Positions 11,194 through 43,379 of a stretch of 64,000 nt of DNA are shown piece by piece. Numbering within the stretch: the first letter of the stretch is position 1; every line of letters begins with the position of its first letter. A program made the translations under genes and the position numbers. The notes under the pieces were generated by a model. The model was not told the DNA's origin and did not search any database. It saw only the letters and a list, made by a program, of their open reading frames with translations. Where the stretch lies: positions 225,652 to 289,651 of IMG/VR virus record IMGVR_UViG_3300042558_003926, one strand, 5' to 3'.

Positions 11194-11197
11194 AATA

Positions 11198-28886: not shown

Positions 28887-28971
28887 ACATTAACATGACT
28901 AGATAACAAGGGATGGACTTAGGTCTGTCCCTTTTTTGTTGTGCTCGGTTTCCGATCAATCTCCCTTGAAA

Positions 28972-28988
28972 CACCGTCGCCGACGGTG
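28972..28988. repeat. CACC-N9-GGTG palindrome
   Basis: CACCGTCG-C-CGACGGTG, perfect, after terminator. Confidence 0.8.
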
Positions 28989-29085
28989 GACGAATCCAGA
29001 TCGAATCCAGGAAAAAGTTTTCGATTTTATTTTTTTTCCTAACCCTATTTCTTATTTTTATATCTAACCAATTAAAATAATAAAT

Positions 29086-29277
29086 ATGACAAATCTAGAG
29101 TTAGAAAAAGAGCTAAGAGAAGAATGGAAAAAATGGCAGGCAAATGCCCATCCAGATGATCGCATGTCATTCATGGACTATGTTGATGAAGTGGGGATAT
29201 TCAAGAATCACCGAATAATTGTTAACAGAGATCGATATGGTGATGTTGAAGCGATCACATTTTATTCTTTAGGTTAA
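29086..29277 (+). CDS. hypothetical early protein
   Basis: Own early promoter. Confidence 0.75.
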   Translation: MTNLELEKELREEWKKWQANAHPDDRMSFMDYVDEVGIFKNHRIIVNRDRYGDVEAITFYSLG

Positions 29278-29281
29278 TTAA

Positions 29282-29317
29282 AAAAAGCCCGGGTTAATTT
29301 TTTATCCCGGGCTTTTT
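29282..29317. promoter_or_regulatory. promoter-embedded inverted repeat
   Basis: AAAAAGCCCGGG-TTAATTTTTTAT-CCCGGGCTTTTT, 12-bp arms, 12-nt spacer. Confidence 0.75.
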
Positions 29318-29355
29318 GTGTTATTTTTACTTCATAACCAATTAAAACAGAACAA

Positions 29356-29679
29356 ATGGAAAATGAAAAAAAATTATTCGTTGCCCAGGGATACGTACTA
29401 GGCAACTTATGGGGAGGAGGCCTAGGTGCCTACCCTACCATCACCATCTCAGGAGAATCAGAAGAGATTGTACTTGAGCAAGCAGAGAAAGAACTAAAGA
29501 CAGGAGGATTAGACCGAGGTATGGGATTCGAAAGCCTTACAGGAGCTTTGCTCAATATTGAAAGAATCATTCATATAGAGATCGACGGTATGCCTTTCAC
29601 CAACCGAACAACAACTCAGAAAACCATTGGGAACTTGGATGAAATGGATATTGAATTTCTAAAAGATCTGATCCCATGA
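29356..29679 (+). CDS. hypothetical early protein
   Basis: Early promoter. Confidence 0.75.
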   Translation: MENEKKLFVAQGYVLGNLWGGGLGAYPTITISGESEEIVLEQAEKELKTGGLDRGMGFESLTGALLNIERIIHIEIDGMPFTNRTTTQKTIGNLDEMDIEFLKDLIP

Positions 29680-29987
29680 GAGTTTATCACGCAACAGCAG
29701 TATCCAATGTTGAGTCTATCAGAGAGAAAGGACTCCTGAAAGTTTGGGAAGGTGTTTACCTAACAGATTCCGAGGAGTCTGCACAGAGATGGATAGGATT
29801 CAGATTGAAAGCAATGGGACATGATAAGATGGCAATCATCGAGGCCGAGGTGAATCCACGCAGCCTGATCGAGGGCACAGATCACTCTCCTATCATGGAA
29901 CTCATCTTCGGTGTGGGCAAGAGCTTGCTCAGTCCTAAAGCGATTCCAGTATCCAAGATTAAAAACATAAAGATTGTTTCTATTTAA
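29676..29987 (+). CDS. ADP-ribosyltransferase/Tpt1-fold small protein
   Basis: VYHAT...SIREKGL...GVYLT. Confidence 0.55.
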   Translation: MRVYHATAVSNVESIREKGLLKVWEGVYLTDSEESAQRWIGFRLKAMGHDKMAIIEAEVNPRSLIEGTDHSPIMELIFGVGKSLLSPKAIPVSKIKNIKIVSI

Positions 29988-29997
29988 ATTCAAGGTC

Positions 29998-30258
29998 ATG
30001 ACTAATAAAAAAGTTCTAGAAAGATATCCCACTGCAATAGCTGTAGAATACAAAACCAAATTTGATGTTGGGTTTGTTGGGAAAGGTGTGAAATTCTACA
30101 TCATCCAGGAGAGCAAGGATTCTGAGTATGCTTTGGGATTTGCCCACTCAGAGAGAGGTGCATGGCAAATGGCAGAATCGTGGTTAGGGAATGATATGTC
30201 GATGTTCAAAGATTACAAAGGGTATCCGATTGAAGATGCCAAATTAGAAATGGAATAG
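29998..30258 (+). CDS. hypothetical protein
   Basis: Start moved to MTNKK. Confidence 0.65.
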   Translation: MTNKKVLERYPTAIAVEYKTKFDVGFVGKGVKFYIIQESKDSEYALGFAHSERGAWQMAESWLGNDMSMFKDYKGYPIEDAKLEME

Positions 30259-30327
30259 CCTCTGGTTTATTTTTTTATCCCAGTCTGGATTATTACTTTT
30301 ATCTCATAACCAATTAAAACAAAGAGT

Positions 30328-30672
30328 ATGCCTTTGAATTTTGATCTAAGAAAAATCAGTCATCACAAAAGACTGTACAGAAAGAATCCGAACGGAACTT
30401 TCAAACTCAACCAAATTGCTGAAACGATTATCCTATCCACAATGAGCGTGGGTATGCGTTCGATTACAGAAAAGAACTGGGAGAAGTTCTACAACCGTTT
30501 ACATCTACTGGAGACGATCCACGGTAGCTTCTTCTATTCCCGAAAGAGAGGCAAGATGGTTCAGAGATACATTACCAAGGATGAGGTGAAGAGAATGATT
30601 GGGCTGGAAGTGAATGCCTCTGAGCTAACATCAAAACAATTCTTAAAAAGATTTGAAAAACATCAGTTCTGA
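30328..30672 (+). CDS. hypothetical early protein
   Basis: Early promoter; terminator at about 30688-30725. Confidence 0.8.
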   Translation: MPLNFDLRKISHHKRLYRKNPNGTFKLNQIAETIILSTMSVGMRSITEKNWEKFYNRLHLLETIHGSFFYSRKRGKMVQRYITKDEVKRMIGLEVNASELTSKQFLKRFEKHQF

Positions 30673-30858
30673 TCCTGCTTTAGGAACTGATGAAAAGGTC
30701 TCGGTTAATCCGGGACCTTTTTTGTGTGTGCTGAATTCGCAGCAGCTGGTAACACCGTCGGCAGTGCTGAGGAAACTTTAACGAAATTACAGCGTAAATA
30801 TTTTTTTATACCTGTGCTAAATGCTTATATTTGATCAAACATAAAAATAAAAAGAAGC

Positions 30859-31260
30859 ATGAATCAAGTTAAAGTATTCGAGTTCTTTCAAGAAGGGGAA
30901 GGAGGAACACCAGTATCCAATTTGTCTAGTACATCCTATTGGGCAGAGTTTGATGAGAACGACGGAAAAACAGCAGATGACTGGGCCAACGATCCAGGAT
31001 TTCAAAATCTAGAGAAGAATCTGGGTATTAGTCCAGATTATCTTTTAGCTCTCAATAGCGAGGGTGATGATGTTGAAAAATTCAAAGGTGTGATTGCCAA
31101 TTCATTACCAGAGAAAACTGTTAAGAGCACTCAGGAATATGTGACCAGTTGGGAGTACTACACAGATTTAGGTATTGCAGTTGCCTGTGGTAATGGAGGT
31201 GCACCAGATTGGTTTTTCGTATTGAAGACTCCAGAAGTAGAATTAGTAGAGGCTATCTAA
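30859..31260 (+). CDS. hypothetical early protein
   Basis: TATATTTG at 30826; terminator after. Confidence 0.8.
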   Translation: MNQVKVFEFFQEGEGGTPVSNLSSTSYWAEFDENDGKTADDWANDPGFQNLEKNLGISPDYLLALNSEGDDVEKFKGVIANSLPEKTVKSTQEYVTSWEYYTDLGIAVACGNGGAPDWFFVLKTPEVELVEAI

Positions 31261-31470
31261 AACTATTTCACAAAAAATCCTCAGACTATCTGGGGATTTT
31301 TTGTGGCCAAATGGTTCGTCATCTTCTTTCTCTTTGAGTAACACCGTCGACGGTATACACACATTCACGTTTAACTTATTTGCTAAAAGATTAAACAAAA
31401 ATAATCCGGGTTTATTTTTTATCCTGGGTTAGAATGGTTAAATTAGCTATAACCAATTAATAACAAAACA

Positions 31471-31914
31471 ATGCTAACCTTAAAAGTAGGAGACAATCTC
31501 CACATCTCAGGAAACCAAGTTATCAGCTATGATACTGTAGTTGCAGAGATATCAGGCAACAGTCTTATAGAGTTAGGTAAATACTCTAGAACAACAACCA
31601 AGCACATCCATAAGATCACAGATCTATTTGGACTCAACCTCATCAGATCCAACAAGAGGAGAGATGACTTCCACTGGTATGAATATGGTGTCAAAACAAA
31701 ATTTGACTCAGCCCTCGGTGTCAAGGCAACCGAACAGATAGCTGAAATAGTTAGGGAGGGGGCCTCGATAGAGAATGCAATCTACCTTGTTGATCTCACT
31801 AAGCTTCGTAAGAAGGACAGAGAGGAGTTAGAGTATTTGTTATCCAAGAAAGGAATCTCAGATGAGAAGATAGCAGCTCTAAAGTCATGGTACTCCATTC
31901 GAAATATGCTGTAG
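31471..31914 (+). CDS. hypothetical early protein
   Basis: ISYDTVVA...YSRTTTKHI motif typical of small phage proteins. Confidence 0.75.
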   Translation: MLTLKVGDNLHISGNQVISYDTVVAEISGNSLIELGKYSRTTTKHIHKITDLFGLNLIRSNKRRDDFHWYEYGVKTKFDSALGVKATEQIAEIVREGASIENAIYLVDLTKLRKKDREELEYLLSKKGISDEKIAALKSWYSIRNML

Positions 31915-31974
31915 GTAATTTTTTTATCCCGGGCTAAATTCTTATATTTAAGTTAACCAATTAAAACGAATCTT

Positions 31975-32187
31975 ATGGAAGATGTAATCATCGACAAGCT
32001 AACTAAGATGAAGAGAGACAAGAAGTACGCTGCTCTATCACTTCATCCACCATTCGGGTCTAAAGTTATCCAAAGAGAAAATAACAGGCTATTTATCAAC
32101 GAGGGAAGGGACGGTAAGTTCGAAGGGGTTTCCGAGGAGTTATACGATGAGTTGGTTGGCAAATTTGATTCACGATATAGAAGATAG
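31975..32187 (+). CDS. hypothetical early protein
   Basis: Early promoter. Confidence 0.75.
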   Translation: MEDVIIDKLTKMKRDKKYAALSLHPPFGSKVIQRENNRLFINEGRDGKFEGVSEELYDELVGKFDSRYRR

Positions 32188-32191
32188 AAAC

Positions 32192-32440
32192 ATGGAAAAA
32201 GATTTAGTTTTTAGAGCAATCGTTACTGGGCCTAAGGAATACCTTCCTGAGGGTACACTTATAGAGAACTTTGTAATCTCACCTTATGATGTTGATGAGG
32301 TGAGAGAGGACGGAGAGACCGAGGATGATGCTATTGCATATCTGAAGGAAGAGTACATAGCCGAGTGGGAACAACGGTGGTGCAAGGTGCAGCTGTTTAC
32401 CGAAGAAGAGTATCAACAAATCAAAAACCAAATACCATGA
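32192..32440 (+). CDS. acidic hypothetical protein
   Basis: Start moved to MEKDL. Confidence 0.7.
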   Translation: MEKDLVFRAIVTGPKEYLPEGTLIENFVISPYDVDEVREDGETEDDAIAYLKEEYIAEWEQRWCKVQLFTEEEYQQIKNQIP

Positions 32441-32664
32441 CAAGAAAAATTGACATTAGAATCTGTGGGAGAAAGATTGAGGGTTATCCAACGGTGAGCC
32501 GAACGATCACGTTTGACACGATAGAAGAACTTATCAGGAAGGCAGACAATGCTATAGAAGAAACATGCTTCGGTAAGGTGGATTGCTATGTAGATAACTT
32601 CAGGGATATTTTGAATTCGGAAGAAGTTAAAATTTTAGAAGCTGATTATTTTATTGTGGATTAA
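32437..32664 (+). CDS. hypothetical protein
   Basis: ATGA-coupled MTRKID. Confidence 0.7.
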   Translation: MTRKIDIRICGRKIEGYPTVSRTITFDTIEELIRKADNAIEETCFGKVDCYVDNFRDILNSEEVKILEADYFIVD

Positions 32665-32721
32665 TTTTTTTTCCTGGATAGTGATTCTTATATTTAAGAT
32701 AACCAATTAAAACAAAGAACA

Positions 32722-32886
32722 TGAATTCAGACGATGAAAAAGAAAGAGAGGAGTTCTTCAAAGCTCTGTCAGAGCATATCTCCCGAGTAGAAAGAGAGGT
32801 TGCAAAAATGCTATTCCTCGCACACAACCCACACGTTCAGGTTTTAGAGAGCAAAAATTATGAATTGATTGTTTGTCTAAACTAAG
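32722..32886 (+). CDS. 54-aa hypothetical protein
   Basis: Read manually behind an early promoter. Confidence 0.6.
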
Positions 32887-32891
32887 AAGCC

Positions 32892-33161
32892 ATGGAAGAA
32901 AAGATTCAAACCATCTTAGAAAGATTTGACTTCCAGAAGGTGAGAGATTATATGATCCTCACCAACTGGACTTGGGTCAATCAACACGGACAATCAGTTC
33001 CCTCGGTGGATGAGATAAGATCAACTGCGTCTAGATTATTAAGAGCTGTTGCTTCTGATGAGAAGGAATACTCAAGCACTGGAACTGGTGGATTAGTTGC
33101 TCACAAATTCCCTTGGGGATTAGATCTTCATTTCGCTTTGGAAAGAAGATCATCCTACTGA
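32892..33161 (+). CDS. hypothetical protein
   Basis: FDFQKVRDYMILTNWTW motif. Confidence 0.75.
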   Translation: MEEKIQTILERFDFQKVRDYMILTNWTWVNQHGQSVPSVDEIRSTASRLLRAVASDEKEYSSTGTGGLVAHKFPWGLDLHFALERRSSY

Positions 33162-33218
33162 TCCCATACATAGTATGGTGGTAAGATACTCTCGCTCGCG
33201 CACATAAAAACCAAAAAA

Positions 33219-33545
33219 ATGAAAACAGTTTCAAGAGAAGAAGCAGCAAAGACGAGTCCTGACTATGCAGAGATCATGAGAAAGGAATCGCACCATGACC
33301 ACGAAATCATCGAGGATGAGCAAGGTACATGGAGATGGAAGTCTCAGCCAACGGTGAAGACGATTCTAGATCGAATCAACTTCAATGATGTATGGATGTT
33401 ATTTCATCACATGGGCTTAGGTAAGAATGATGAGAGTGTCAGAAAGCTTTATCGTGATATGGGTTATTCATTGAGCGGGTACTGGGAGATATTCTACTGG
33501 GAGATGAACAACGAGGATGCGGATCAATACCGTCCCGAGGTGTAA
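33219..33545 (+). CDS. hypothetical protein
   Basis: ORF followed by terminator. Confidence 0.75.
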   Translation: MKTVSREEAAKTSPDYAEIMRKESHHDHEIIEDEQGTWRWKSQPTVKTILDRINFNDVWMLFHHMGLGKNDESVRKLYRDMGYSLSGYWEIFYWEMNNEDADQYRPEV

Positions 33546-33624
33546 CCTCCATAGAGCAACAACAAAAAAGTCTCAGAATTTCTGAGACTTTTTTTGTGAG
33601 TTATGGATTCGTGCATGGAGGAAA

Positions 33625-33641
33625 TACCGTTGGCGACGGTG
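33625..33641. repeat. CACC-N9-GGTG palindrome variant
   Basis: TACCGTTG-G-CGACGGTG between convergent units. Confidence 0.7.
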
Positions 33642-33661
33642 TAATCTACTAGACGATCGGA

Positions 33662-34063
33662 TTAATCATATGTCATTATTCGAGGAACACAGATGTCAGT
33701 GGATGTTATTTCAACTCCAGGAATAGCTTTACCAAATAAATTAGACTTAGCAGATGATGATGCTTTGTATTTACCTGAGAAATATAATTTGTTATTGTAA
33801 CCCATTTTGAATTTAGGAAATAGGCTAGCTTCCCATCTTCCGTCAGGATAGAAATCTACGGTAAAAGTTTTGTAGGCGGAGAAAGATGTGCTCATAGTAT
33901 TCTTTATTTCGACCTCCCAGTGATTTGCAATCGGATTCTTATTCCAAGGACCACCGTGAGGTGTTGCAGTTTTAGCACCGATCTTTTTAAGGAATTCTGG
34001 CATTTTGGGTAATGCTGCTGCTTCATTAATTTCTTCTCCGTAAGATTTGATGTTGTTTAGCAT
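33662..34063 (-). CDS. CTS-leader protein, antisense island in early region
   Basis: NIKSYGEEINEA; GATATATAC upstream. Confidence 0.8.
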   Translation of the reverse strand: MLNNIKSYGEEINEAAALPKMPEFLKKIGAKTATPHGGPWNKNPIANHWEVEIKNTMSTSFSAYKTFTVDFYPDGRWEASLFPKFKMGYNNKLYFSGKYKASSSAKSNLFGKAIPGVEITSTDICVPRIMTYD

Positions 34064-34210
34064 GATTTATTCTTTATTTGATGTATATATCTGCTTTCAG
34101 TCGTCAAGCTGTAGACAGTTGATTACACCTCGGAAACTTTTTTATCCCGGTTAATCTTTTTTATCCTGTAGTAGTTATGTATATTAGCTACATTAACCAA
34201 TTTAGATGTT

Positions 34211-34525
34211 ATGGGATTTGTAAAGATAACTTGTATAACGGAAAATCCGGTATATTATACTAACAAGAGGAGATCGAACGTAGCACTCGTTTCAGTATTT
34301 GATAAGAACAATCCGCTGGGAACTCTAAAGAAAATCGGTGGAAATCACCCTTTCATGTTTATTGATCTCAAGGAGTATTTGGAAGATTTACATGAAATTT
34401 CAGAGGAGTTCAATATTGAGGATTGGGAGTTTCAACTTGATTATTCTAATACCGAAAGCGATAGCTATTTAGTTGCAAAGGAAGAAGAGATTAGTGAGGA
34501 GGAATACACAAATCTCATCAGGTAG
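34211..34525 (+). CDS. hypothetical early protein
   Basis: Early-promoter variant. Confidence 0.7.
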   Translation: MGFVKITCITENPVYYTNKRRSNVALVSVFDKNNPLGTLKKIGGNHPFMFIDLKEYLEDLHEISEEFNIEDWEFQLDYSNTESDSYLVAKEEEISEEEYTNLIR

Positions 34526-34610
34526 AAAGTGAGATAATTTTATCCCGGTTAATTTTTTTATCCTAGGTCTAATTGTTATATTTGTATCATAACCAATTAA
34601 AGCAATCCTC

Positions 34611-34766
34611 ATGTACTCATTGAACTGTGATTATTATACCCGAGAGTTTTCTACTGTTGATGAACTCATCTCTGATATCATGTCCTCTGGCATGGATCCC
34701 AACTATGAAATAACTTTCAACGGTGTTTCCACTGGAGAACTCGCCGCTGACTTACTCCAATACTAA
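34611..34766 (+). CDS. 51-aa acidic protein
   Basis: Read manually behind an early promoter. Confidence 0.65.
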   Translation: MYSLNCDYYTREFSTVDELISDIMSSGMDPNYEITFNGVSTGELAADLLQY

Positions 34767-34768
34767 CC

Positions 34769-34882
34769 ATGGAAAAGATTGAGGTTACCATACAGGAAAT
34801 CCAGATGGTCACAAGGCCTAATGTGTACAAGAATCGGAAGAAATACACCCGTAAAAAAAAGCATAAAAAAGACCCGGAATAA
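34769..34882 (+). CDS. 37-aa basic peptide with ArfA-like motif
   Basis: MEKIEVTIQEIQMVTRPNVYKNRKKYTRKKKHKKDPE. Confidence 0.55.
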   Translation: MEKIEVTIQEIQMVTRPNVYKNRKKYTRKKKHKKDPE

Positions 34883-34940
34883 TTTTTTTATCCCGGGTTA
34901 GAACCTTACTTTTACTTTATAACCAATTAAAAAATATCCT

Positions 34941-35192
34941 ATGTCAGCTTCATTAGTTACAATCACACACGAGGTTCTTAAGGAAAGACTTCGCAGAGGA
35001 ACAGTTCGTTTCTACTTCAGAAAAACAGACGGATCCCTTCGCATCGCAATGGGAACATTGGACCTCACAAGAGTTCCTACATCAGGTCAGCCTAAGGGTG
35101 GCAACGCACCACAAGGGGTAACCACTTTCTTCGACCTGGAGAAGAACGCTTGGAGATCGGTTTCCCACACTCAGCAAATTTGGATTGATTAA
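34941..35192 (+). CDS. WYL_2/DUF2693-like SH3 beta-barrel protein
   Basis: VRFYFRKTDGSLRIAMGTL...FFDLEKNAWRS. Confidence 0.75.
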   Translation: MSASLVTITHEVLKERLRRGTVRFYFRKTDGSLRIAMGTLDLTRVPTSGQPKGGNAPQGVTTFFDLEKNAWRSVSHTQQIWID

Positions 35193-35216
35193 GTCTAACC
35201 ACAAAAACACAAAGTC

Positions 35217-35453
35217 ATGTACATAGTAATCACGACACACCCCGACGGGGATTCATACATGGTAACGGCAGACCAAGGGAAAGCAAAGGCTCATTTCGAT
35301 TCCGAGGTGGAACGATCCAGCGATTCAGTATTCTCAGATTCACAATGTCCGATATACCTGGCCGAGGTGAAAGACGGAGAGCGATTCGGATTTGGCGGTT
35401 GGGGAGAAATACATGGGTGCGAGATCCTCGAAGAGCATTATCCAGAGGATTAA
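35217..35453 (+). CDS. hypothetical protein
   Basis: ORF track. Confidence 0.7.
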   Translation: MYIVITTHPDGDSYMVTADQGKAKAHFDSEVERSSDSVFSDSQCPIYLAEVKDGERFGFGGWGEIHGCEILEEHYPED

Positions 35454-35510
35454 TTTTTTATCCCGAACTAAGTTCTTATATTTGATTCACAAACCAATTA
35501 AATTCACGAT

Positions 35511-35798: not shown

Positions 35799-35883
35799 AT
35801 CTCCTCAACTCCATATATAGAAAAGAGAGACCTTCGGGTCTCTTTTTTTGTGCAGCTGGATTTGCAGCTGTTGCAGCTGGAAA

Positions 35884-36456: not shown

Positions 36457-36555
36457 GACGGATACAGACCGATCGGATTTAATCCTTATGGTTTTATTTT
36501 TTTATCCTATTCCAAATTCTTATATTTATACTATAACCAATTAAAAGAATACCAA

Positions 36556-37092
36556 ATGAAAAATTTATCGTTAGAAGGACTAACACCAGAGCAAATAAAA
36601 TTGCTAGAATCTGTAGCTGATGGATTTAGAGTAGCAAAAAAAGAAGAACCGGTAGTGGTAGAATCACCGAAGGACGAACCACCTAAATTCTATAGGATAA
36701 TTAGTATGAAATCCTGGCTGGAAGAGGAAGATGATTATGGTTACACTACAGAGATAGATTTTATAGCTAAGGTAAGATCCAACGACCCGGATAGTTTAGA
36801 ACGTGTCTTATATGATGATTACTTTCCACTCTTAAAAAAACATGTTGACAAAAATAAAGAAAAAGAAGGATTTGATTTGATTAGGCTAATAAGCGAATAT
36901 GATTTTTTTGAAGATGCTAATTATTCTAAAGATGGATTTAGTAGGGGAATAGGTTTTACAATATACGTCGACGAAATTACAGAGGAAGAATATAATGATT
37001 CCGATAAATGGAAAGATGCTGATGTGGAGTGTATACCAGCGAAATTCAATATCGTATCTAGCGGGTTTACTAAAATACTCAAAGAATACTAG
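36556..37092 (+). CDS. acidic hypothetical early protein
   Basis: Start moved to MKNLSLEG behind the early promoter. Confidence 0.8.
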   Translation: MKNLSLEGLTPEQIKLLESVADGFRVAKKEEPVVVESPKDEPPKFYRIISMKSWLEEEDDYGYTTEIDFIAKVRSNDPDSLERVLYDDYFPLLKKHVDKNKEKEGFDLIRLISEYDFFEDANYSKDGFSRGIGFTIYVDEITEEEYNDSDKWKDADVECIPAKFNIVSSGFTKILKEY

Positions 37093-37193
37093 AAGACGAG
37101 GATTAAAAAATAAACAATTACACTAAAGGGGCTTATGCTCCTTTTTTTGTGTCCATAGGTTTAGTATAGGTTTGCATCCTTTGCAGCTGGAAA

Positions 37194-37210
37194 CACCGTC
37201 GCCAACGGTG
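37194..37210. repeat. CACC-N9-GGTG palindrome
   Basis: CACCGTCGCCAACGGTG. Confidence 0.8.
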
Positions 37211-37306
37211 GATGGATACAGACCGATTGGATTTAATCCTTATGATTTTATTTTTTATCCTATTTGGAATACTTATATTTATGCTATAACCAATTAAAAT
37301 TTAACT

Positions 37307-37612
37307 ATGGAAAGAAAAAAAATAATCACTAGCAAAGATATCAAATTTGAGGCTGGGTCCAATGAGAACTCTTATCATTTGAGACACCGGGCAAAACCGA
37401 ATATTAAGATTAAAATACAAGGTATAAAAAGCGGGTCTACTAAGATACTATTGAAGCCACATTGGCATTTTGCTAATCTTTCGGAGGCTGAACGTATTCA
37501 GTGTGATATATTTGATCTTATTCGTAAAGAATTTCTGGAATTAGATTCCACCAAAGAAAAGATAGCTGAGATCATTAATAAAAGATGTTCTAAATATGAC
37601 GACATAAAGTAA
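37307..37612 (+). CDS. hypothetical early protein
   Basis: Early promoter. Confidence 0.75.
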   Translation: MERKKIITSKDIKFEAGSNENSYHLRHRAKPNIKIKIQGIKSGSTKILLKPHWHFANLSEAERIQCDIFDLIRKEFLELDSTKEKIAEIINKRCSKYDDIK

Positions 37613-37629
37613 CCAATAAAGACTCGAAG

Positions 37630-37917
37630 ATGAAGGCATTTAAAATAGTACTAAATCACCTGCAGGTAGATTATTGGGATCAACTAGAAGTAGTGGTCGT
37701 CATACTTATCGTTGGGGCTAAAAACAAAACCTCTGCGAAAGAGATTGTCTCGAAAAAATATAAGATAGTTAACAATCTAGCTAAGAGCGAAACGGGTTCT
37801 TTTCAAATTATGAGCTCTAATATTATAAACGAATGTACTGCTAAATCTGAATTTATAGAGGAAGTGTATTCAAGCGGAGATCCAGTCCTAAATAAATTAC
37901 CTAATAGATCTTATTAA
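37630..37917 (+). CDS. hypothetical protein
   Basis: ORF track. Confidence 0.65.
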   Translation: MKAFKIVLNHLQVDYWDQLEVVVVILIVGAKNKTSAKEIVSKKYKIVNNLAKSETGSFQIMSSNIINECTAKSEFIEEVYSSGDPVLNKLPNRSY

Positions 37918-38053
37918 TTTCAAAAATCATTTTTTCTTTAAATAGAATCTTGTGCATTTGCATTTAAAAAAAATTCCAAATCTGTCCCGGGTTAATTTTT
38001 TATCCTGGGCCTAATTGTGTACTTTTATACTATAACCAATTAAAAACAAACCA

Positions 38054-38353
38054 ATGAAAAAACTATTGATTGTCTATCGACTATTTGACCCAACTTACGG
38101 TCCACAGGGAAATGCTAAAACATTAGCTGTTCGATTGAATGAGGACAACACTCTATCCTATTCATACTACGGTGGTTGGCAACCTAGCGGAATGGGATTT
38201 GCAATTTCAAACATGCAACTCAAACGTTCATTACCTTTGGGAGCCAGAAATTTCAAAACGGTCGAAGACCTACATCAGGAAATCGTTTCAATCCTGGCAA
38301 CCGGGGTAGGTTCAAGGAAAATCAGCACGTTTGAAATCCTGAACGACCTATAA
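38054..38353 (+). CDS. hypothetical early protein
   Basis: Early promoter with inverted repeat. Confidence 0.75.
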   Translation: MKKLLIVYRLFDPTYGPQGNAKTLAVRLNEDNTLSYSYYGGWQPSGMGFAISNMQLKRSLPLGARNFKTVEDLHQEIVSILATGVGSRKISTFEILNDL

Positions 38354-38437
38354 AAAACATTTGGAATTTGGCCCAGGTTAATTTTTTATCCTGGGCCTAA
38401 TTGTGTACTTTTATATTAACCAATTAAAAGAAACCAA

Positions 38438-38623
38438 ATGAGAAATTGTCAAAGATGCGGAAAGGAAGCTAACCCTACCATTATGTCCATGTTTAATACC
38501 CAAATGATATGTATGGGTTGCAAGGATGAAGAGAAGAAGAATCCGAGGTATGACGAAGCGGTAAGGAGAGAAGCTGAAGAGGTAAAAAAAGGAAATTATA
38601 ATTTTGAAGGAATAGGGTTATAA
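38438..38623 (+). CDS. small zinc-finger protein
   Basis: CQRC...SMFNTQMICMGC. Confidence 0.7.
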   Translation: MRNCQRCGKEANPTIMSMFNTQMICMGCKDEEKKNPRYDEAVRREAEEVKKGNYNFEGIGL

Positions 38624-38681
38624 TATTTTTTTATCCCAACTCTAATCGTTACTTTTATCTTACAACCAATTAAAAAACAAA

Positions 38682-38840
38682 ATGAAAACAAGAACAACAA
38701 TACATTGGACATTATACATTATACTAGTCATTACAATACTAAGCTTTATGGTTACACCTAAAGCTTGGATGGTTGTTCTGGCAATAGGCATTGTACTTTA
38801 TGTAAGACATGCACTAAATACAAAAACTGAGGGGGATTAG
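38682..38840 (+). CDS. 52-aa membrane protein
   Basis: Read manually behind an early promoter. Confidence 0.6.
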   Translation: MKTRTTIHWTLYIILVITILSFMVTPKAWMVVLAIGIVLYVRHALNTKTEGD

Positions 38841-38926
38841 ATTTTAGGTTGGTTGGTTATAAATGAAAAGGGCCTCGTACACACGAGGTCTTTTTTGTTG
38901 GGCAAACGCTAAGCTCTCCTCCGACA

Positions 38927-38943
38927 CACCGTCGCCAACGGTG
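38927..38943. repeat. CACC-N9-GGTG palindrome
   Basis: CACCGTCGCCAACGGTG. Confidence 0.8.
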
Positions 38944-39022
38944 TTGTGGATGTGAAGTAAAAATTAGATGTGAAGTAGATATATAAGTTCAATACACGAC
39001 AAAACAAAAAAAAACAAAAATT

Positions 39023-39607
39023 ATGAGTAGAAACATTATTGATTTTGATAATTTCTCTTCAAGCGATTATGAAGCGGGATATTCAGAAGAAGGTCTTAGC
39101 ATCGAAGAAGCATTGGACTTCGTAAATGGTGCGGAACTGGAAGAACTATTAGCTATCAATCTTGACGAGGCAGAGGGAGCAGCACCAGGGGAAGGTATAG
39201 CTTCTGTTATAGCTGGAGGATCACAAGGCATGGCGAAGATTGTACAACAAGGTCTAGAAAAAGCAGGAGTTATCGGTAAAGATAAAAAACCTATGAAATT
39301 GAATCCAAAGGAAGCTTTCGGTAAAGTTACCAGCGGTATTTTGAATCAGGTAGCAGATCCAACTAAGGCAGCTTTATTACTTAGAAACTATTATTCACGC
39401 TTTCTAAACATGAATAAGGTTCCTTGTAATATGATTAACATCGACAGCAAGAAAGAAATGAAGTTTGCTGACTATCAGAAAATGATGCAGGATAAAGCAA
39501 TTAAATCTAAAGGTGGTGTAAAACCAGGAGCACCGGGAGCTAAACCAGGAGCACCGGGAGCTAAACCAGGAGCACCAGCTGCAGGAGCAAAACCTGAAGG
39601 TAAGTAA
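39023..39607 (+). CDS. CTS-like-leader protein with GAKPGAP-repeat tail
   Basis: NIIDFDNF...INLDEAEG; GATATATAAG upstream. Confidence 0.8.
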   Translation: MSRNIIDFDNFSSSDYEAGYSEEGLSIEEALDFVNGAELEELLAINLDEAEGAAPGEGIASVIAGGSQGMAKIVQQGLEKAGVIGKDKKPMKLNPKEAFGKVTSGILNQVADPTKAALLLRNYYSRFLNMNKVPCNMINIDSKKEMKFADYQKMMQDKAIKSKGGVKPGAPGAKPGAPGAKPGAPAAGAKPEGK

Positions 39608-39816
39608 TAAACAACCAAACCTAAATATGAAAAGACTCTTCGGAGTCTTTTTTTGTGGGATCTGGATTGCCTCCTATAAACACCCCGGAACATAGTATGG
39701 TGGTAACATACTCCGCACGCACGTCCGTAATTAACATTAGACTGCTAATAATTTTTTTATTCGTGCTAAAGGACTTATATTTGCTATGTTTAACACTTTA
39801 ACTAAAGATAAACAAA

Positions 39817-40101
39817 ATGAATAGAGAAACTAGATTTGAATCCGGATTAATCGTTTACAAGGGAGACTGGGCTGGTTCACAATGGACTATCACAGGCAAC
39901 ATGAAGCGATCATTCACCATTAAGGAGTTTGAATCAGCTCATGACTTCGAGGACTTCATTAAAGAAAGGATCGATTGCCGAGGTATAGAGTTTGATAGTG
40001 AGTTCTGTCAATTCTTTGCCTACACCAAGACTCCTGAAAGAGCAATCAGGTTTGCCCGGGATATAGAGGCTTACTTCGCTAAGGTCCGAAGACTTCTATA
40101 A
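39817..40101 (+). CDS. hypothetical early protein
   Basis: TATATTTG at 39776. Confidence 0.75.
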   Translation: MNRETRFESGLIVYKGDWAGSQWTITGNMKRSFTIKEFESAHDFEDFIKERIDCRGIEFDSEFCQFFAYTKTPERAIRFARDIEAYFAKVRRLL

Positions 40102-40224
40102 ACAACGGTGAATCCAACTGGCAATCTAGCCCGACAAAATCGGGCTGGAATTTTTTGTGGTTTATTTTTTTTCCTGGACCCTAATGATTACTTTAGCTTT
40201 ATAACCAATTAAAACCAAATAATT

Positions 40225-40563
40225 ATGTTCAATCAACTTTGTGTATGGCCAGGAGTTATCGTAGGATCTACTCCACAAGAACAAGAAGAGTTAGTAAAGT
40301 TCATGAAGAACGAAATGGGAGTTAGAGTTAAGTATCATACCGAGGTGCAAACTCTGCCTGATCTGAACCCATCGGGAAATCCTATTCCAGAGACCGGAGG
40401 TCGTAATGATCTTTTCTTCTTCGTCCACGATGAGGATGTTTCAAAGTTTGCAGTTCCAAGACTTCACTTAGGCATCCGATGGTGGGAGGATGTGATTGTG
40501 TACAACGACAACTCACACCTATACACTCAAGAGTTCATTCAAGCCAATCCTCCCAAATGGTAG
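40225..40563 (+). CDS. hypothetical early protein
   Basis: Early promoter and terminator. Confidence 0.8.
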   Translation: MFNQLCVWPGVIVGSTPQEQEELVKFMKNEMGVRVKYHTEVQTLPDLNPSGNPIPETGGRNDLFFFVHDEDVSKFAVPRLHLGIRWWEDVIVYNDNSHLYTQEFIQANPPKW

Positions 40564-40644
40564 GATCTGGTCTCTGAATAATCTAAATCCTCAGTTTCCC
40601 CGCTGAGGATTTTTTGTGTGCGCTGAATTCGCAGCAGCTGGTAA

Positions 40645-40661
40645 CACCGTTGCCAACGGTG
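40645..40661. repeat. CACC-N9-GGTG palindrome
   Basis: CACCGTTG-C-CAACGGTG, perfect. Confidence 0.8.
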
Positions 40662-40761
40662 GATGGGCGGAGAGCTGGAGGGAACTTATTTTCCCCTGAA
40701 TCGGATTTTCCCCGTAATAGGATGTTACTTTTGAATTATACTTATACATAAAAAGAATTAA

Positions 40762-41178
40762 ATGACAACGGTATTCTTCTTACTCACAATCCTCTTCCTT
40801 CTATACGAGGTGTATGGGATAATCAACACTCGAAGCTTATACGAGTTTAAAAAGTCAGTTGCTGATAAGTCAAAGTTTAATTCCGAGGAGGATAGATCTG
40901 CAGGTTGTCTTTATCTATTCATTATACTACCATACTTCTTCTGGGGTGTCCTCGGTGTTGCCCTTAGCGATCAATGGATTTCTTTCGTTATACTCTTTGC
41001 AATCGGAATCGTTACTTCAATAATTTCTAATGGGCTTAAAAGAATAGGTCACCCCGACGGTGTGGTCAAGATGCTCTGGCTAAAGATAGATGCTTTAGCT
41101 TCTGCAATCATGTTGGTTGATATCTTCATGGTTCACTTCAGAGGCGATGTGTACACTTCAATTCTGGTTTTGTTTTAG
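40762..41178 (+). CDS. four-TM membrane protein
   Basis: Four hydrophobic helices. Confidence 0.75.
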   Translation: MTTVFFLLTILFLLYEVYGIINTRSLYEFKKSVADKSKFNSEEDRSAGCLYLFIILPYFFWGVLGVALSDQWISFVILFAIGIVTSIISNGLKRIGHPDGVVKMLWLKIDALASAIMLVDIFMVHFRGDVYTSILVLF

Positions 41179-41358
41179 GTTTGGTTTTTTAAATTGGTAA
41201 ATCTGGGTCAGCATACGTCCCAGATTTTTTTGTGGGAAAAGCTTGGATGTCCATGCAGAACACCGTTGGTAAACTTTTTTCAATTTTATCCCGGGTTAAT
41301 TTTTTTTCCCGGTTAAGATCCCTTACTTTTATATCATAACCAATTAAAACAAAACAAA

Positions 41359-41502
41359 ATGAAAACAGCAGGAAAAATCGCAACAGTTACTTTGCAAGTT
41401 TGGTCAGCAGCATTAGCTTTAACTTTAGTAGTAGCAATCGTATTTGCAATCGTTCAGGTTGTGACAGGCAACTACCACGGTACTGCATCTAGAGAATTCT
41501 AA
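41359..41502 (+). CDS. 47-aa membrane peptide
   Basis: Read manually behind an early promoter. Confidence 0.65.
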   Translation: MKTAGKIATVTLQVWSAALALTLVVAIVFAIVQVVTGNYHGTASREF

Positions 41503-41576
41503 AGCAAAAACATTTTCTTGAATCAATCTGAGAGCCTGGTCCACACCAGGCTTTTTTGTGTCCATAGGTTTCCCAT

Positions 41577-41620
41577 AGGTTTTCAGAGGTTTTCAGAGGT
41601 TTTCAGAGGTTTTCAGATGT
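41577..41620. repeat. 10-nt tandem repeat (GGTTTTCAGA)x4
   Basis: Seen between a terminator and a palindrome. Confidence 0.8.
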
Positions 41621-41632
41621 TACAGCTGGATT

Positions 41633-41649
41633 CACCGTCGGCAACGGTG
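41633..41649. repeat. CACC-N9-GGTG palindrome
   Basis: CACCGTCG-G-CAACGGTG. Confidence 0.8.
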
Positions 41650-41656
41650 TTACCAG

Positions 41657-41920
41657 TTATAGCATAGGATTCGATGTTGCAGAATCAGGAACTCTGATGA
41701 TGATTGAATCTCCAAATCGGTCAACACCAAATCCAGTTGGAGATAGATTTCTGTAATAATCTAGGTAATAATCTGTACGATCAAAGCCCTCGGTGTTCTC
41801 ACTCTCTCTTACGCAATTAGGAACTATACGTCCATTCTTTTTCTTAGTACCAATCTGCTTGTATCCTTTCCAACAAGGATTGGCTTTTTCTTTTAGAAAA
41901 TCTGAATAAGTTAGAATCAT
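41657..41920 (-). CDS. CTS-leader protein, antisense island
   Basis: MILTYSDFLKE; NPCWKGYKQIGTKKKNGRIVPNCV motif; AATATATAG upstream. Confidence 0.8.
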   Translation of the reverse strand: MILTYSDFLKEKANPCWKGYKQIGTKKKNGRIVPNCVRESENTEGFDRTDYYLDYYRNLSPTGFGVDRFGDSIIIRVPDSATSNPML

Positions 41921-42020
41921 GCTCTATATATTTACCCCGGCCGAAAATAATCACGGGTTAATTTTTTTTCCCGGGCTAGATGGATTATATTTACTTCATA
42001 ACCAATTAAAACAAAAAACC

Positions 42021-42197
42021 ATGAAAACATTAGCTTTCAGAATCAATCTAGTTATTGCAACACTTTGCATGTTAGTATCAGCAGCAGGTTTCTTTGGAGC
42101 AATCCTAACCGGTCATCTGTTTCAAGGAGTCTTTTTTGGATTTCTCACGGTGATTGCCATAGGCATACTTAAACTCACTATAGAAGAATCCGCATAA
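42021..42197 (+). CDS. two-TM membrane protein
   Basis: Start moved to MKTLAF behind the early promoter. Confidence 0.7.
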   Translation: MKTLAFRINLVIATLCMLVSAAGFFGAILTGHLFQGVFFGFLTVIAIGILKLTIEESA

Positions 42198-42319
42198 AAA
42201 ATTAGGTTAGGTTGGTTAAGTGAGTAAGAAGTCCCGGAGCAATCTGGGACTTTTTTGTGGTGTGTGGATATGCAGCATCCGATCAGATCTGCACATTCAC
42301 CTCGGTCAACGGTGAAAGG

Positions 42320-42532
42320 ATGTTGAATCTTGTAGAGTTATATACAATAAAAAGAGAAGCTATGAGAAAGAAAGGATTAAAACTCAGAAACTCATGGGGC
42401 AGAGGTTTGCAATGGGACAAACTTCACATTTACCTCAGAGTTGGCCCGTTGGTACTATTCCAACTAGACACTGACTGGTCAAACCGCCGGTTTACATTAG
42501 CTGTACTGAACTTTAAGATCACTAATAAGTAG
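42320..42532 (+). CDS. basic hypothetical protein
   Basis: ORF followed by terminator; start uncertain. Confidence 0.5.
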   Translation: MLNLVELYTIKREAMRKKGLKLRNSWGRGLQWDKLHIYLRVGPLVLFQLDTDWSNRRFTLAVLNFKITNK

Positions 42533-42628
42533 AGATATGGTTTAGTAAGAGAAAGCTCCTTATGGAGCTTTTTTTGTCCGAGGTGTTTCCCATTTAAAAT
42601 GATATATATAAAAAAATAAAAAACTCAC

Positions 42629-42910
42629 ATGAACGCGAACATTCTTGAATTTGATGATTTCTCTAATGAATCGATTATGCCTAGACCTGATGGAAGAAAA
42701 GTACCTGCACCACACTTTCCGCTAACACCCGAGGAGAAAGTGGTGATAGATGATTTTAAGGCAGAAGTTGAAAGAGCTCTTGTACAGGAGATTGTTAGGC
42801 CAAACTTTGGAGCCAACAAATACAGTTCTAGACCTAAGACACTAAAAGAGCTGATTGAAGATTTACAATCAGTAATAACAGATTTTGCTCCGAAAGCTAA
42901 ATCAAGATAA
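42629..42910 (+). CDS. CTS-like-leader protein
   Basis: NILEFDDFSNES; GATATATA upstream. Confidence 0.75.
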   Translation: MNANILEFDDFSNESIMPRPDGRKVPAPHFPLTPEEKVVIDDFKAEVERALVQEIVRPNFGANKYSSRPKTLKELIEDLQSVITDFAPKAKSR

Positions 42911-43020
42911 TCACATTGCAGCACATGCATTACACCGAGGGCTAGAAAAAATCTAGTCCTTTATTTTTTTTCCTGGACATGAATACTTATATTTACTTAT
43001 AACCAATTAAACAAATCATT

Positions 43021-43119
43021 ATGTCAAAGCAAACAAAAAAGGGAAAGAAATCAATTAAATCTGCAAACATTCAGGCTCAGGAATGGGATAACGATTCTTG
43101 GGCAACTCAGAGAGGATAA
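43021..43119 (+). CDS. 32-aa peptide
   Basis: Read manually behind the last early promoter; terminator follows. Confidence 0.5.
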   Translation: MSKQTKKGKKSIKSANIQAQEWDNDSWATQRG

Positions 43120-43379
43120 GTTTGGAGTCAGATCCCAAGCAGGCGAAGAACCGGGGTAGTGCCCGGTTTTTTTTGTGGACCAGGTTTTCCTATGGGAAGA
43201 ATAGATTCAACACCGCTGGCCGAGGTGAATTGAGGGAGGCATCCAAGGGTCCCAAAAGGACCCCAGATGGGATCCAGATAGGACCAGGAGAGCTCATGAG
43301 ATTCACCCCGGCCAATTCATCCACGGTGAAAAAGAAGATAGCTATGGGAATCCAGGAAATCTTCTTCTTTCACATCCCG

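What the first reader, a model, noticed from the sequence alone, without database searches (positions are those of the whole stretch)
28960..43230. Dispersed 17-bp CACC-N9-GGTG palindrome at terminator-promoter junctions
Seen: CACCGTYG-S-CRACGGTG at 28972, 33625, 35884, 36440, 37194, 38927, 40645 and 41633. Degenerate copies with the same spacing at 42298 and 43211, a collapsed copy at 31343, and half-sites at e.g. 22675, 28353, 30753, 41260. Often preceded by GCAGCTGG(A/T)AA. Full copies sit downstream of a terminator and upstream of the next unit, outside coding sequence. Fixed spacing despite arm divergence suggests a dimeric protein site rather than an RNA hairpin. Inference: an operator or insulator, a genome-organising (parS-like) site, or a cassette recombination site comparable to the PeSL cassettes of T4-type phage RB49.
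Basis: partly seen in the sequence, partly recalled or inferred. Interest (0 to 1): 0.78.

Follow-up and report, generated by a model that had tools for sequence, protein, structure and literature searches.

The report
Conserved palindrome behind megaphage terminators
A 17-base palindrome sits about 37 bases after almost every transcription terminator in the accessory-gene region of an uncultured 290-kb lake phage and its relatives, and it is most likely the docking site of an unidentified dimeric DNA-binding protein that marks the boundaries of the small gene cassettes there.

Summary
There are 7 exact copies and one 1-mismatch copy of CACCGTYGSCRACGGTG, all at window 28972-41649. None occurs elsewhere in the 289,651-bp genome, and shuffles expect zero.

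The same site, in general form CACCGYYG-N-CRRCGGTG, is clustered in the same syntenic slot of six other lineages of 319-435 kb lake phages whose proteins are only about 55-66% identical. Two lineages carry changed arms (AACCG...CGGTT and GAACG...CGTTC).

The site is tied to the preceding intrinsic terminator. The T-run-to-site distance has a median of 37 nt, and the stop-codon-to-site distance is 93.5 nt (CV 0.13). The distance to the next start codon varies much more (CV 0.52). Two copies face the 3' end of a convergent gene. Promoter-only junctions lack the site.

The inner positions do not covary, and the G and C beside the centre are invariant. That favours two-fold recognition of duplex DNA over an RNA hairpin.

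My best reading is a boundary (roadblock or insulator) site inside PeSL-like terminator-promoter cassettes. The binding protein was not identified. Rearrangement junctions in relatives fall mostly in the promoter cassette and the terminator tail, and only sometimes in the palindrome. ParB, integrases, resolvases and REP transposases are absent. The proposed HTH protein at 6183 is not conserved.

The parts
27800..43230 (+). Hyperplastic region: about 40 small genes, nearly all on the + strand, in short units. It holds every copy of the palindrome (X) and about 21 copies of a private promoter cassette (P).
28972..28988 (.). X, full copy CACCGTCGCCGACGGTG. It lies 34-35 nt after the T-run of terminator 28908-28933.
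33625..33641 (.). X with one mismatch (TACCGTTGGCGACGGTG). It lies 29-30 nt after bidirectional terminator 33567-33595 and is followed 21 nt later by the 3' end of minus-strand gene 33662-34063.
35884..35900 (.). X, full copy, 34-35 nt after terminator 35824-35849. Left flank type A, right flank type 1.
36440..36456 (.). X, full copy, 34-35 nt after terminator 36382-36405. Left flank type B, right flank type 2.
37194..37210 (.). X, full copy, 45-46 nt after terminator 37125-37148. Left flank type A, right flank type 2.
38927..38943 (.). X, full copy, 30-31 nt after terminator 38871-38896. It is followed by a different, non-P upstream region of gene 39023-39607.
40645..40661 (.). X, perfect palindrome CACCGTTGCCAACGGTG, 29-30 nt after terminator 40585-40615. 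Its T-run, spacer and left arm are 96% identical to those of the copy at 30753.
41633..41649 (.). X, full copy, 75-76 nt after terminator 41531-41557, with 4.5 copies of AGGTTTTCAG between them. It is followed 8 nt later by the 3' end of minus-strand ORF 41657-41920.
42298..42314 (.). Degenerate X (CACCTCGGTCAACGGTG) with a variant left arm and an intact right arm, 42 nt after terminator 42229-42256.
43211..43227 (.). Degenerate X (CACCGCTGGCCGAGGTG), 37 nt after terminator 43149-43174. The same variant right arm recurs in relatives.
31342..31354 (.). Collapsed X (CACCGTCGACGGT) with the centre deleted, 41 nt after terminator 31275-31302.
30753..30769 (.). Left arm only (CACCGTCG, then unrelated sequence), 30 nt after terminator 30694-30723. 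Homology with the 40645 copy ends at the centre of X.
28353..28360 (.). Left arm only (CACCGTGG), 37 nt after terminator 28290-28316.
41261..41268 (.). Left arm only (CACCGTTG), 29 nt after terminator 41199-41231.
36494..36555 (+). Example of the P promoter cassette. It reads T-rich tract, TTATATTTA box, TAACCAATTAAAA, then ATG 14 nt later with no Shine-Dalgarno sequence. About 21 copies lie between 27817 and 43000, and 13 of them have no X.
43490..43700 (.). Conserved non-coding element at the right edge of the X cluster. It is present at the same place in five other lineages. Whether it belongs to the same system is unknown.

Best explanation
X is a recognition site on double-stranded DNA for a sequence-specific protein that binds as a symmetric dimer. 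The protein is probably encoded by the phage, because the arms of the site changed together in whole lineages. X is a fixed part of the 3' boundary of the small transcription units in the accessory (probably early) region: stop codon, hairpin terminator, T-run ending in GTG, about 30-45 bp of free sequence, then X. Inferred: the bound protein acts as a boundary element. It would block RNA polymerase that reads through or slides past the terminator, in either direction, so that each strongly expressed cassette is insulated from its neighbour. It may also allow the whole region to be silenced later in infection. This would work like the 'stoperators' of mycobacteriophage L5, but with a symmetric site coupled to a terminator. 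Shown: the sequence, copy number, confinement, conservation, terminator linkage and lack of base-pair covariation. Inferred: protein binding, the dimer, and the roadblock function. As a by-product, the identical 17-21 bp patches serve as crossover points, together with the terminator tail and the promoter cassette, when cassettes are shuffled by homologous recombination.
For: Non-random and confined. Conserved in seven lineages whose flanking DUF932-like protein is 53-66% identical, while the flanks of X are not conserved. Lineage-wide symmetric arm changes (CAC/GTG, AAC/GTT, GAA/TTC). No covariation of inner pairs, invariant G8/C10, free centre and both orientations relative to the terminator. 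Terminator linkage: T-run to X median 37 nt (IQR 35-45), stop to X 93.5 nt (CV 0.13), X to next ATG 119 nt (CV 0.52), n=42. In this genome 15 of 17 terminators in the region carry X or a remnant of it at +27 to +76, and none of 65 terminator-like sites elsewhere does. Two copies lie between convergent genes, so no downstream promoter is needed. 13 of 21 P promoters have no X. X is not a host repeat, since there are only single hits in bacterial genomes. Precedent for dispersed intergenic sites that stop elongation: PMC9283540.
Against: No binding protein was identified. Pfam found no HTH, RHH or similar family among 70 small proteins conserved in three lineages, and no HTH_3 anywhere in the genome. 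No transcript data could be used. In lineage G006 about half the sites have unlike arms (AACCG...CGTTC) plus a conserved one-sided CCC/CCGC flank, which is odd for a homodimer. T-proximal half sites persist at the correct offset, which hints at polarity or at breakage in the centre. Dense arrays without terminators exist (5 sites in about 560 bp in G006, 3 in 150 bp in G001), and a pure terminator back-up does not need these. The spacing to the downstream T-rich promoter element is also limited (27-42 nt in several cassettes), so an upstream-activator role is not excluded.
Confidence: 0.4

Rival explanations
1. X is an upstream operator or activator site for the next promoter. The protein bound at about -80 to -100 switches the downstream cassette on or off.
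For: In 5-7 of the 12 copies in the window a P or P-like promoter follows, and X lies about 39-42 nt before its T-rich tract. Similar arrangements occur in relatives at 27-43 nt. In one relative an inserted cassette carries its own X at its 5' end.
Against: 13 of 21 P promoters have no X. Two copies face the 3' end of a convergent gene, and 43211 precedes 550 bp without genes. The X-to-P distance ranges from 30 to 107 nt across lineages, whereas the T-run-to-X distance is tight.
Confidence: 0.2
2. X is the target of a phage-encoded sequence-specific nuclease or nickase. Cuts at X seed recombination and make this region hyperplastic. It would be a cassette-shuffling device without an integrase.
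For: Palindromic targets suit homodimeric nucleases. Left-arm-only copies exist in which homology between paralogous junctions stops at the centre of X: 30753 vs 40645, and the G002 terminator pair 302742-302772 vs 305985-306008. A collapsed copy lacks the centre. All four combinations of two left and two right flank types occur around X. X is confined to the region whose gene content differs most between relatives. A GIY-YIG homing endonuclease gene sits inside one junction in G001.
Against: Most rearrangement junctions lie in the P cassette or at the T-run/GTG tail, not in X. In G001 vs G009, 4 of 69 homology ends lie within 60 nt of X against 3.1 expected. There is no tyrosine or serine recombinase and no Y1 transposase. 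The only conserved restriction-fold protein (TnsA-like) sits in the replication module and may be a junction resolvase. Identical 17-bp patches attract crossovers by homology alone.
Confidence: 0.15
3. X works as an RNA hairpin in read-through or convergent transcripts. It could be a processing site, a stabiliser, a binding site for an RNA-binding protein, or a weak second terminator.
For: The 17-mer folds as a 6-7 bp stem (-6.7 to -9.2 kcal/mol). The outer pairs change in a compensatory way between lineages (C-G to A-T at positions 1/17, C-G to A-T at 3/15). The minus-strand gene at 33662-34063 would carry X in its 3' UTR.
Against: Inner pairs do not covary (pair 7-11 is Watson-Crick in 8 of 42). 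G8 and C10 are conserved symmetrically although they would lie in the loop. X lies beyond a canonical terminator, so most transcripts lack it. Both orientations occur. There is no consistent T-run after X. In G006 two stem pairs are broken in about half the sites. There is no Rfam match.
Confidence: 0.1
4. X sites form a centromere-like or genome-organising array, or belong to a replication origin.
For: 8-17 palindromes cluster in about 5% of the genome, as parS or matS sites do. Dense arrays occur in non-coding DNA in two relatives. A conserved non-coding element closes the cluster in six lineages. A RecA/KaiC-like ATPase gene lies just upstream.
Against: There is no ParB_N protein, and no integrase that would suggest a temperate or plasmid-prophage lifestyle. 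The strict offset from terminators is not a property of centromere or origin repeats. GC skew shows no switch at the cluster.
Confidence: 0.1

Closest known systems
Stoperators of cluster A mycobacteriophages (L5 gp71 sites)
   Same: There are many copies of one short protein-binding site dispersed in short intergenic spaces of a phage genome, away from promoters. They are thought to stop elongating RNA polymerase (PMC9283540).
   Different: Stoperators are 13-bp asymmetric sites bound by a monomer. They depend on orientation, are spread over the whole genome of a temperate phage, and are not tied to terminators. X is a 17-bp palindrome found in either orientation, confined to about 5% of a probably lytic 290-kb genome, and fixed about 37 nt after an intrinsic terminator.
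PeSL cassettes of T4-type phages (RB49/phi1, PST/T4, nt-1/KVP40)
   Same: Both are composite terminator-plus-early-promoter junctions, repeated between small accessory genes of hyperplastic regions, with indels and swaps between relatives at or near them (PMC4122927; here).
   Different: PeSLs consist of a stem-loop, a sigma70-like promoter and a Shine-Dalgarno sequence. They have no extra sequence-conserved palindrome. Here the promoter is a different, Bacteroidota-like type without a Shine-Dalgarno sequence. X is an additional element whose exact sequence is kept across lineages in which the rest of the junction is not.
17-bp two-fold symmetric operators of lambdoid repressors/Cro
   Same: The length is 17 bp with an odd central base pair, 8-bp arms and a variable centre base (established knowledge, not tested here).
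   Different: Lambdoid operators lie in tandem and overlap promoters. X is single, lies outside promoters, and no Cro/CI-type HTH (HTH_3) is detectable in the genome.
Dispersed centromere/operator palindromes: parS, RK2 KorB OB sites, N15 sopC-like sites
   Same: Several copies of a 13-17 bp palindrome are scattered or clustered over kilobases, and some act on promoters at a distance (my own knowledge).
   Different: Those sites need a ParB-family protein, and none is found here. They have no fixed relation to terminators.
REP/BIME extragenic palindromes of bacteria
   Same: Both are short extragenic palindromes at the 3' ends of transcription units and between convergent genes.
   Different: REPs are transcribed, are imperfect and longer, carry a 5' GTAG, are spread genome-wide, and are linked to RAYT (Y1) transposases. 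No Y1_Tnp was found here. X lies beyond the terminator.
Conserved inverted repeats (CIRs) bound by the repressor of Streptomyces phage phiC31
   Same: As far as I recall, these are about 17-bp inverted repeats at many intergenic places of the early region. This is recalled from memory; the papers could not be retrieved, so it is a lead only.
   Different: phiC31 is a temperate phage of Actinobacteria with an unrelated sequence. A relation to terminators was not verified.

Membership tests
PeSL-type terminator/promoter cassette | Stem-loop terminator immediately upstream of a conserved early promoter, repeated between small genes of a hyperplastic region | tested here: met
   17 terminators and about 21 P cassettes lie in 15 kb. 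The gene content of the region is mostly not shared with relatives.
PeSL-type terminator/promoter cassette | Indels and replacements between relatives have their junctions in the cassettes | tested here: met
   Junctions 36563|37992, 34167|34538, 34162|28390 and 36558|30308 lie in P. Junction 29039|35878 lies in X plus its right flank. Extra cassettes are inserted right after the T-run/GTG tail. This holds for the junction as a whole, not for X specifically.
PeSL-type terminator/promoter cassette | Near-consensus sigma70 promoter plus Shine-Dalgarno sequence, with no further conserved element | tested here: not met
   The sigma70 scan found fewer sites than in shuffles (30 vs 44.6). P has a TTATATTTR box and no Shine-Dalgarno sequence. 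X is an extra element.
Stoperator-like elongation block | Many copies of a repressor site in short intergenic spaces outside promoters | tested here: met
Stoperator-like elongation block | Asymmetric site with orientation correlated with the direction of transcription | tested here: not met
   The site is palindromic. The C/T asymmetry at position 7 occurs in both orientations (15 vs 10).
Stoperator-like elongation block | A cognate repressor binds the site and stops elongation | not testable with these tools
   No binder was identified. The one RNA run was too thin.
ParB-parS / KorB-OB centromere or silencing system | A ParB-family protein encoded by the replicon | tested here: not met
   PF02195 gave no match in the 289,651-bp genome, while the controls were positive.
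Site-specific recombination site (integron attC, invertase or resolvase site) | A cognate tyrosine or serine recombinase | tested here: not met
   PF00589 and PF00239 gave no match.
Site-specific recombination site (integron attC, invertase or resolvase site) | Crossover confined to the site | tested here: inconclusive
   There is a four-gamete pattern around X, and two paralogous pairs end at its centre. However, most junctions lie elsewhere.
REP element with RAYT | A Y1 (IS200/IS605-like) transposase and genome-wide extragenic spread | tested here: not met
   PF01797 gave no match. The sites are confined to one 14-kb region.
Structured RNA element / intrinsic terminator | Base pairs kept by compensatory change, and a U-run after the stem for a terminator | tested here: not met
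   Pair 7-11 is Watson-Crick in 8 of 42 and pair 6-12 in 26 of 42. There is no consistent T-run after X. Rfam gave no match.
Homing-endonuclease target | Endonuclease gene inserted at or beside its target, with the target absent or altered in genomes that carry the gene | tested here: inconclusive
   One GIY-YIG gene in G001 is inserted between the terminator tail and X and is absent in G009. The homologue in this genome lies at genome 155261-155932, away from any X.

The most novel reading that the evidence does not exclude
X is the cut or nick site of a phage-encoded, sequence-specific homodimeric nuclease, and its specificity co-evolves with the site. Programmed breaks just behind terminators would turn the accessory region into a dedicated cassette-shuffling locus. 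Functionally this would be an integron-like gene-exchange system that runs on homologous recombination and has no integrase.
Probability: 0.12. Interest if true: 0.9.

Novelty: new variant of a known kind. Interest (0 to 1): 0.6.

Why it matters
Huge phages from environmental metagenomes have hundreds of genes but almost no known regulatory logic. This is a concrete and testable cis-element. Its exact sequence is held across at least seven lineages, its position is fixed relative to terminators, and it is restricted to the region where accessory genes are gained and lost. If it is a boundary or roadblock site, it would be the first terminator-coupled, symmetric counterpart of stoperators, and a ready-made insulator part for Bacteroidota-type hosts. 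If instead it is a recombination trigger, it would explain mechanistically why hyperplastic regions are hyperplastic. In either case the site can be used as bait to fish out an unannotated DNA-binding protein family from uncultured phages.

Tried and rejected
1. Megablast and tblastn against 50,697 GenBank phage records gave no close relative. The best match was an uncultured 484-kb phage at 35% identity for the neighbouring ATPase.

2. Rfam and tRNA scans of the window found nothing.

3. Transcript mapping failed. One metatranscriptome held 6% of the words, only four short low-depth contigs lay on the stretch, and no ends could be read. The apparent 'joints' in DNA runs come from in-genome repeats of the P cassette.

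4. ParB_N, Phage_integrase, Resolvase, Y1_Tnp and HTH_3 are all absent from the genome.

6. A Pfam scan of 40 proteins from the region found only WYL_2, a superinfection-exclusion family and a weak OAD_gamma hit. A scan of 70 small proteins conserved in three lineages found no sequence-specific DNA-binding family. It found only an Hc1 histone-like protein, a TnsA-like nuclease and sigma factors.

7. PDB sequence searches of four conserved proteins of the region gave nothing. ESM Atlas showed only that the upstream 364-aa neighbour is DUF932-like.

8. The breakpoint statistic for G001 vs G009 showed no enrichment at X and a weak one at the terminator tail.

9. A scan of 185,579 bacterial and archaeal genomes found only single hits, mostly in high-GC bacteria, so X is not a host repeat or a multi-copy host operator.

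10. A promoter hidden in the terminator-to-X spacer was considered. TAnnTTTG-like boxes occur in only a few spacers, so the idea was dropped.

11. A sigma-54 or ECF promoter reading of X was considered and dropped, because the partner elements are missing at the required spacing.

Full report
**What the window is.** The window is the last 64 kb of a 289,651-bp IMG/VR virus record, rated complete by CheckV and with about 37% G+C. The record recurs in many lake-water metagenomes. It has no close relative among 50,697 deposited phage genomes. The genome encodes three sigma-70-like proteins, a gp32-like single-strand-binding protein, clamp-loader-like ATPases, ribonucleotide reductase, an Hc1 histone-like protein and a GIY-YIG/NUMOD3 endonuclease. 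I found no integrase, resolvase or ParB. It therefore looks like a lytic 'huge phage' that uses host RNA polymerase with its own sigma factors.

- CACCG-N7-CGGTG occurs 7 times against 0.00 expected.
- An eighth copy, at 33625, has one mismatch.
- In the whole genome, copies with up to 1 mismatch lie only between window 28972 and 41649.

**Anatomy of the region.** Window 27.8-43.2 kb holds about 40 small genes, nearly all on the + strand and almost all without recognisable families. Two kinds of junction separate them.
- One is a private promoter cassette, P, present in about 21 copies. It reads: a T-rich tract often flanked by a covarying inverted repeat, a TTAYATTTR box, TAACCAATTAAAA, and ATG about 14 nt later with no Shine-Dalgarno sequence. 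From my own knowledge, the box resembles the TAnnTTTG -7 element of Bacteroidota promoters, and the missing Shine-Dalgarno sequence fits such a host.
- The other is a canonical hairpin terminator whose T-run is nearly always followed by GTG (13 of 16 here, against 13 of 65 elsewhere).

X occurs only behind terminators. Of 17 terminators in the region:
- 8 carry a full X;
- 2 carry a degenerate X;
- 1 carries a collapsed X;
- 4 carry a terminator-proximal half site at the same offset (+27 to +41);
- 2 carry nothing.

None of 65 terminator-like sites outside the region has X. Thirteen of the 21 P promoters have no X.

**Relatives.** An exact-pattern scan of IMG/VR and a search with the neighbouring DUF932-like protein found six further lineages of 319-435 kb (G001, G002 with near-identical G003-G005, G006, G007, G008, G009).
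- G000 shares 256 of 371 ORFs with G002 at a mean 61% identity, and 210 with G001 at 57%.
- In every lineage the sites (about 4-5 in the partly examined G007 and G008, 8-19 in the others, at up to 2 mismatches) are clustered in the same slot, just downstream of a RecA/KaiC-like ATPase gene and the DUF932-like gene.
- The genes between the sites are mostly different and the shared ones are in a different order.
- The flanks of X are not conserved, but X is: CACCGYYG-N-CRRCGGTG.
- Two lineages carry other arms. G007 has AACCGYTG-N-CAACGGTT. G006 has (G/A)A(A/C)CGYTG-T-CAACGTTC.
- A scan of one genome for each of 185,579 prokaryote species found only single hits, mostly in high-GC bacteria. X is therefore not a host repeat.

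**DNA or RNA?** As RNA the 17-mer can form a 6-7 bp stem. Several findings argue against a hairpin as the selected feature.
- Among 42 sites defined only by their outer five bases, pair 7-11 is Watson-Crick in 8, G·U-type in 10 and mismatched in 24.
- Pair 6-12 is Watson-Crick in 26 of the 42.
- G8 and C10, which could not pair around a one-base loop, are invariant in 41.
- The centre can be any base.
- The C/T difference between the arms occurs in both orientations relative to the terminator (15 vs 10).
- The site lies beyond a good terminator and is not followed by a T-run.

Symmetric conservation, independent Y/R wobble in each arm and lineage-wide change of both arms are what a two-fold symmetric protein on duplex DNA would produce. 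One caveat applies: about half of the G006 sites have unlike arms and a one-sided CCC/CCGC flank.

**To which neighbour does X belong?** The figures below cover 42 sites from seven lineages (G000 values hand-corrected for spurious ORFs).

| Distance | Median | IQR | CV |
|---|---|---|---|
| Upstream stop codon to X | 93.5 nt | 87-101 | 0.13 |
| T-run to X | 37 nt | 35-45 | 0.24 |
| X to next start codon | 119 nt | 94-148 | 0.52 |

The copies at 33625 and 41633 are followed at 21 and 8 nt by the 3' end of a minus-strand gene. The first of those genes has a homologue in G002. X is thus part of the 3' boundary of a unit, not a standard promoter operator. That is the basis for the roadblock or insulator reading, by analogy with stoperators (PMC9283540).

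**Recombination.**
- G001 vs G009 (about 80% nucleotide identity). Homology ends are not enriched at X (4 of 69 within 60 nt, 3.1 expected) and only weakly at the terminator tail (7 vs 3.2). One clean case shows two extra cassettes in G001 whose borders are the duplicated terminator tail TTTTTTTGTGGG and the spacer before X. One of these cassettes is a GIY-YIG endonuclease gene.
- Fifteen metagenome contigs that carry the G000-type site. They show shuffled cassette orders. Four junctions lie in P (36563|37992, 34167|34538, 34162|28390, 36558|30308). One lies in X plus its right flank (29039|35878). One extra cassette is inserted exactly after a terminator tail and brings its own X.
- Within G000. 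Two left-flank types and two right-flank types occur in all four combinations around X (35884, 37194, 28972, 36440). Two paralogous pairs lose homology at the centre of X: 30753 vs 40645, and the G002 terminator pair 302742-302772 vs 305985-306008.

The junctions as a whole therefore behave like the PeSL cassettes of T4-type phages (PMC4122927), and X is one of several crossover patches. Homology alone can explain this. It does not explain why the exact sequence is kept across lineages. A nuclease target remains a live, more novel alternative.

**The binder.** I could not identify it.
- The proposed HTH protein (6183-6497) is absent from G001 and G002, which share the same site.
- Pfam sees no HTH, RHH or similar family in 70 small proteins conserved in three lineages, nor in the proteins of the region.
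- HTH_3 is absent genome-wide.
- Three small genes of the region are conserved and are each followed by a terminator and X in three lineages. They are homologues of 27837-28265, 34941-35192 (WYL_2) and 35511-35798. They have no informative matches.

**Verdict.** The feature is real, strongly non-random and conserved across a clade, and I found no description of it in the literature searches run here.
- The claim 'sequence-specific protein site on duplex DNA' is well supported by inference; I put it at about 0.7.
- The specific function, a boundary or roadblock behind terminators, is the best of several readings at about 0.4.
- By design it is closest to stoperators embedded in PeSL-like cassettes, but it fails defining features of both. 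I therefore class it as a new variant of a known kind.

Noticed in passing
window 43120-43780 (core 43490-43700): A stretch of about 650 bp has no ORF. Its 200-nt core is conserved at the right edge of the X cluster in G002, G001, G009, G008 and G006. It holds GGGG(A/T)CCC palindromes, two CCTCGTATA repeats and a CCCCCT...AGGGGGG hairpin. RNAalifold found 38 pairs but only one compensatory change, and Rfam gave no match. It could be an origin, a protein-binding array or an RNA.
   Followed up: partly
window 27817-43000 (about 21 copies, e.g. 36494-36555): This is a private promoter cassette. A T-rich tract TTAATTTTTTTAT is flanked by an inverted repeat whose stems covary (TTTGGGA/TCCCAAA, GGCCCAGG/CCTGGGCC, CCCGGG/CCCGGG). 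It is followed by TTAYATTTR, then TAACCAATTAAAA, then ATG without a Shine-Dalgarno sequence. It is conserved in G001, G002 and G006. The box resembles the Bacteroidota -7 element, which hints at the host.
   Followed up: partly
window 28290-43174 (terminators); whole genome: The T-run of intrinsic terminators is followed by GTG in 13 of 16 cases in this region and in 13 of 65 elsewhere, far above the 1 in 64 expected. Cassette insertions in relatives start exactly after this tail.
   Followed up: partly
L129 (G001 132549-133454): A free-standing GIY-YIG homing-endonuclease-like gene is inserted between a terminator tail and the X spacer, with the terminator duplicated. It is absent from the close relative G009. 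The homologue in this genome (GIY-YIG plus NUMOD3) lies at genome 155261-155932, outside the window.
   Followed up: partly
window 32372, 32489, 33349, 34718, 40103, 41055: The right-arm octamer CAACGGTG/CGACGGTG alone occurs 6 times on the + strand inside the region, 5 of them inside coding sequence and in different frames. About 1 is expected from the rest of the genome. No left-arm-only copy lies in coding sequence.
   Followed up: no
window 35851-35881, 41562-41621; L154/L155 (G006): Short tandem repeats fill the terminator-to-X spacer or follow X. Examples are TGCAGCTGG x3, AGGTTTTCAG x4.5 and CCATAGGTTTC x2. In G006 there are TGTTGCTGTC x3, GCAGCAACTTC x3 and GGAAGCATCT x2. A GGATAC/GATGT-type motif recurs just downstream of X in several lineages.
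   Followed up: no
window 22610-22731: Outside the main cluster, a terminator-like hairpin is followed at about +40 by AAACACCGCGG (a left arm), and 34 nt further on by CCGACGGTG (a right arm) inside the end of the minus-strand CHAP-domain gene. It may be a split or decayed copy.
   Followed up: no
window 8773-13630 and 47522-49045: This is a family of at least 7 paralogous genes with leucine-rich repeats (LRR_4). They are arranged in tandem on the minus strand, and two more lie on the plus strand.
   Followed up: no
window 38438-38623: A 61-aa CxxC...CxxC zinc-ribbon protein lies in the region and is 66% identical in G002. By eye it resembles the small TraR/DksA-type zinc fingers that phages use to act on RNA polymerase. 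This was not tested.
   Followed up: no
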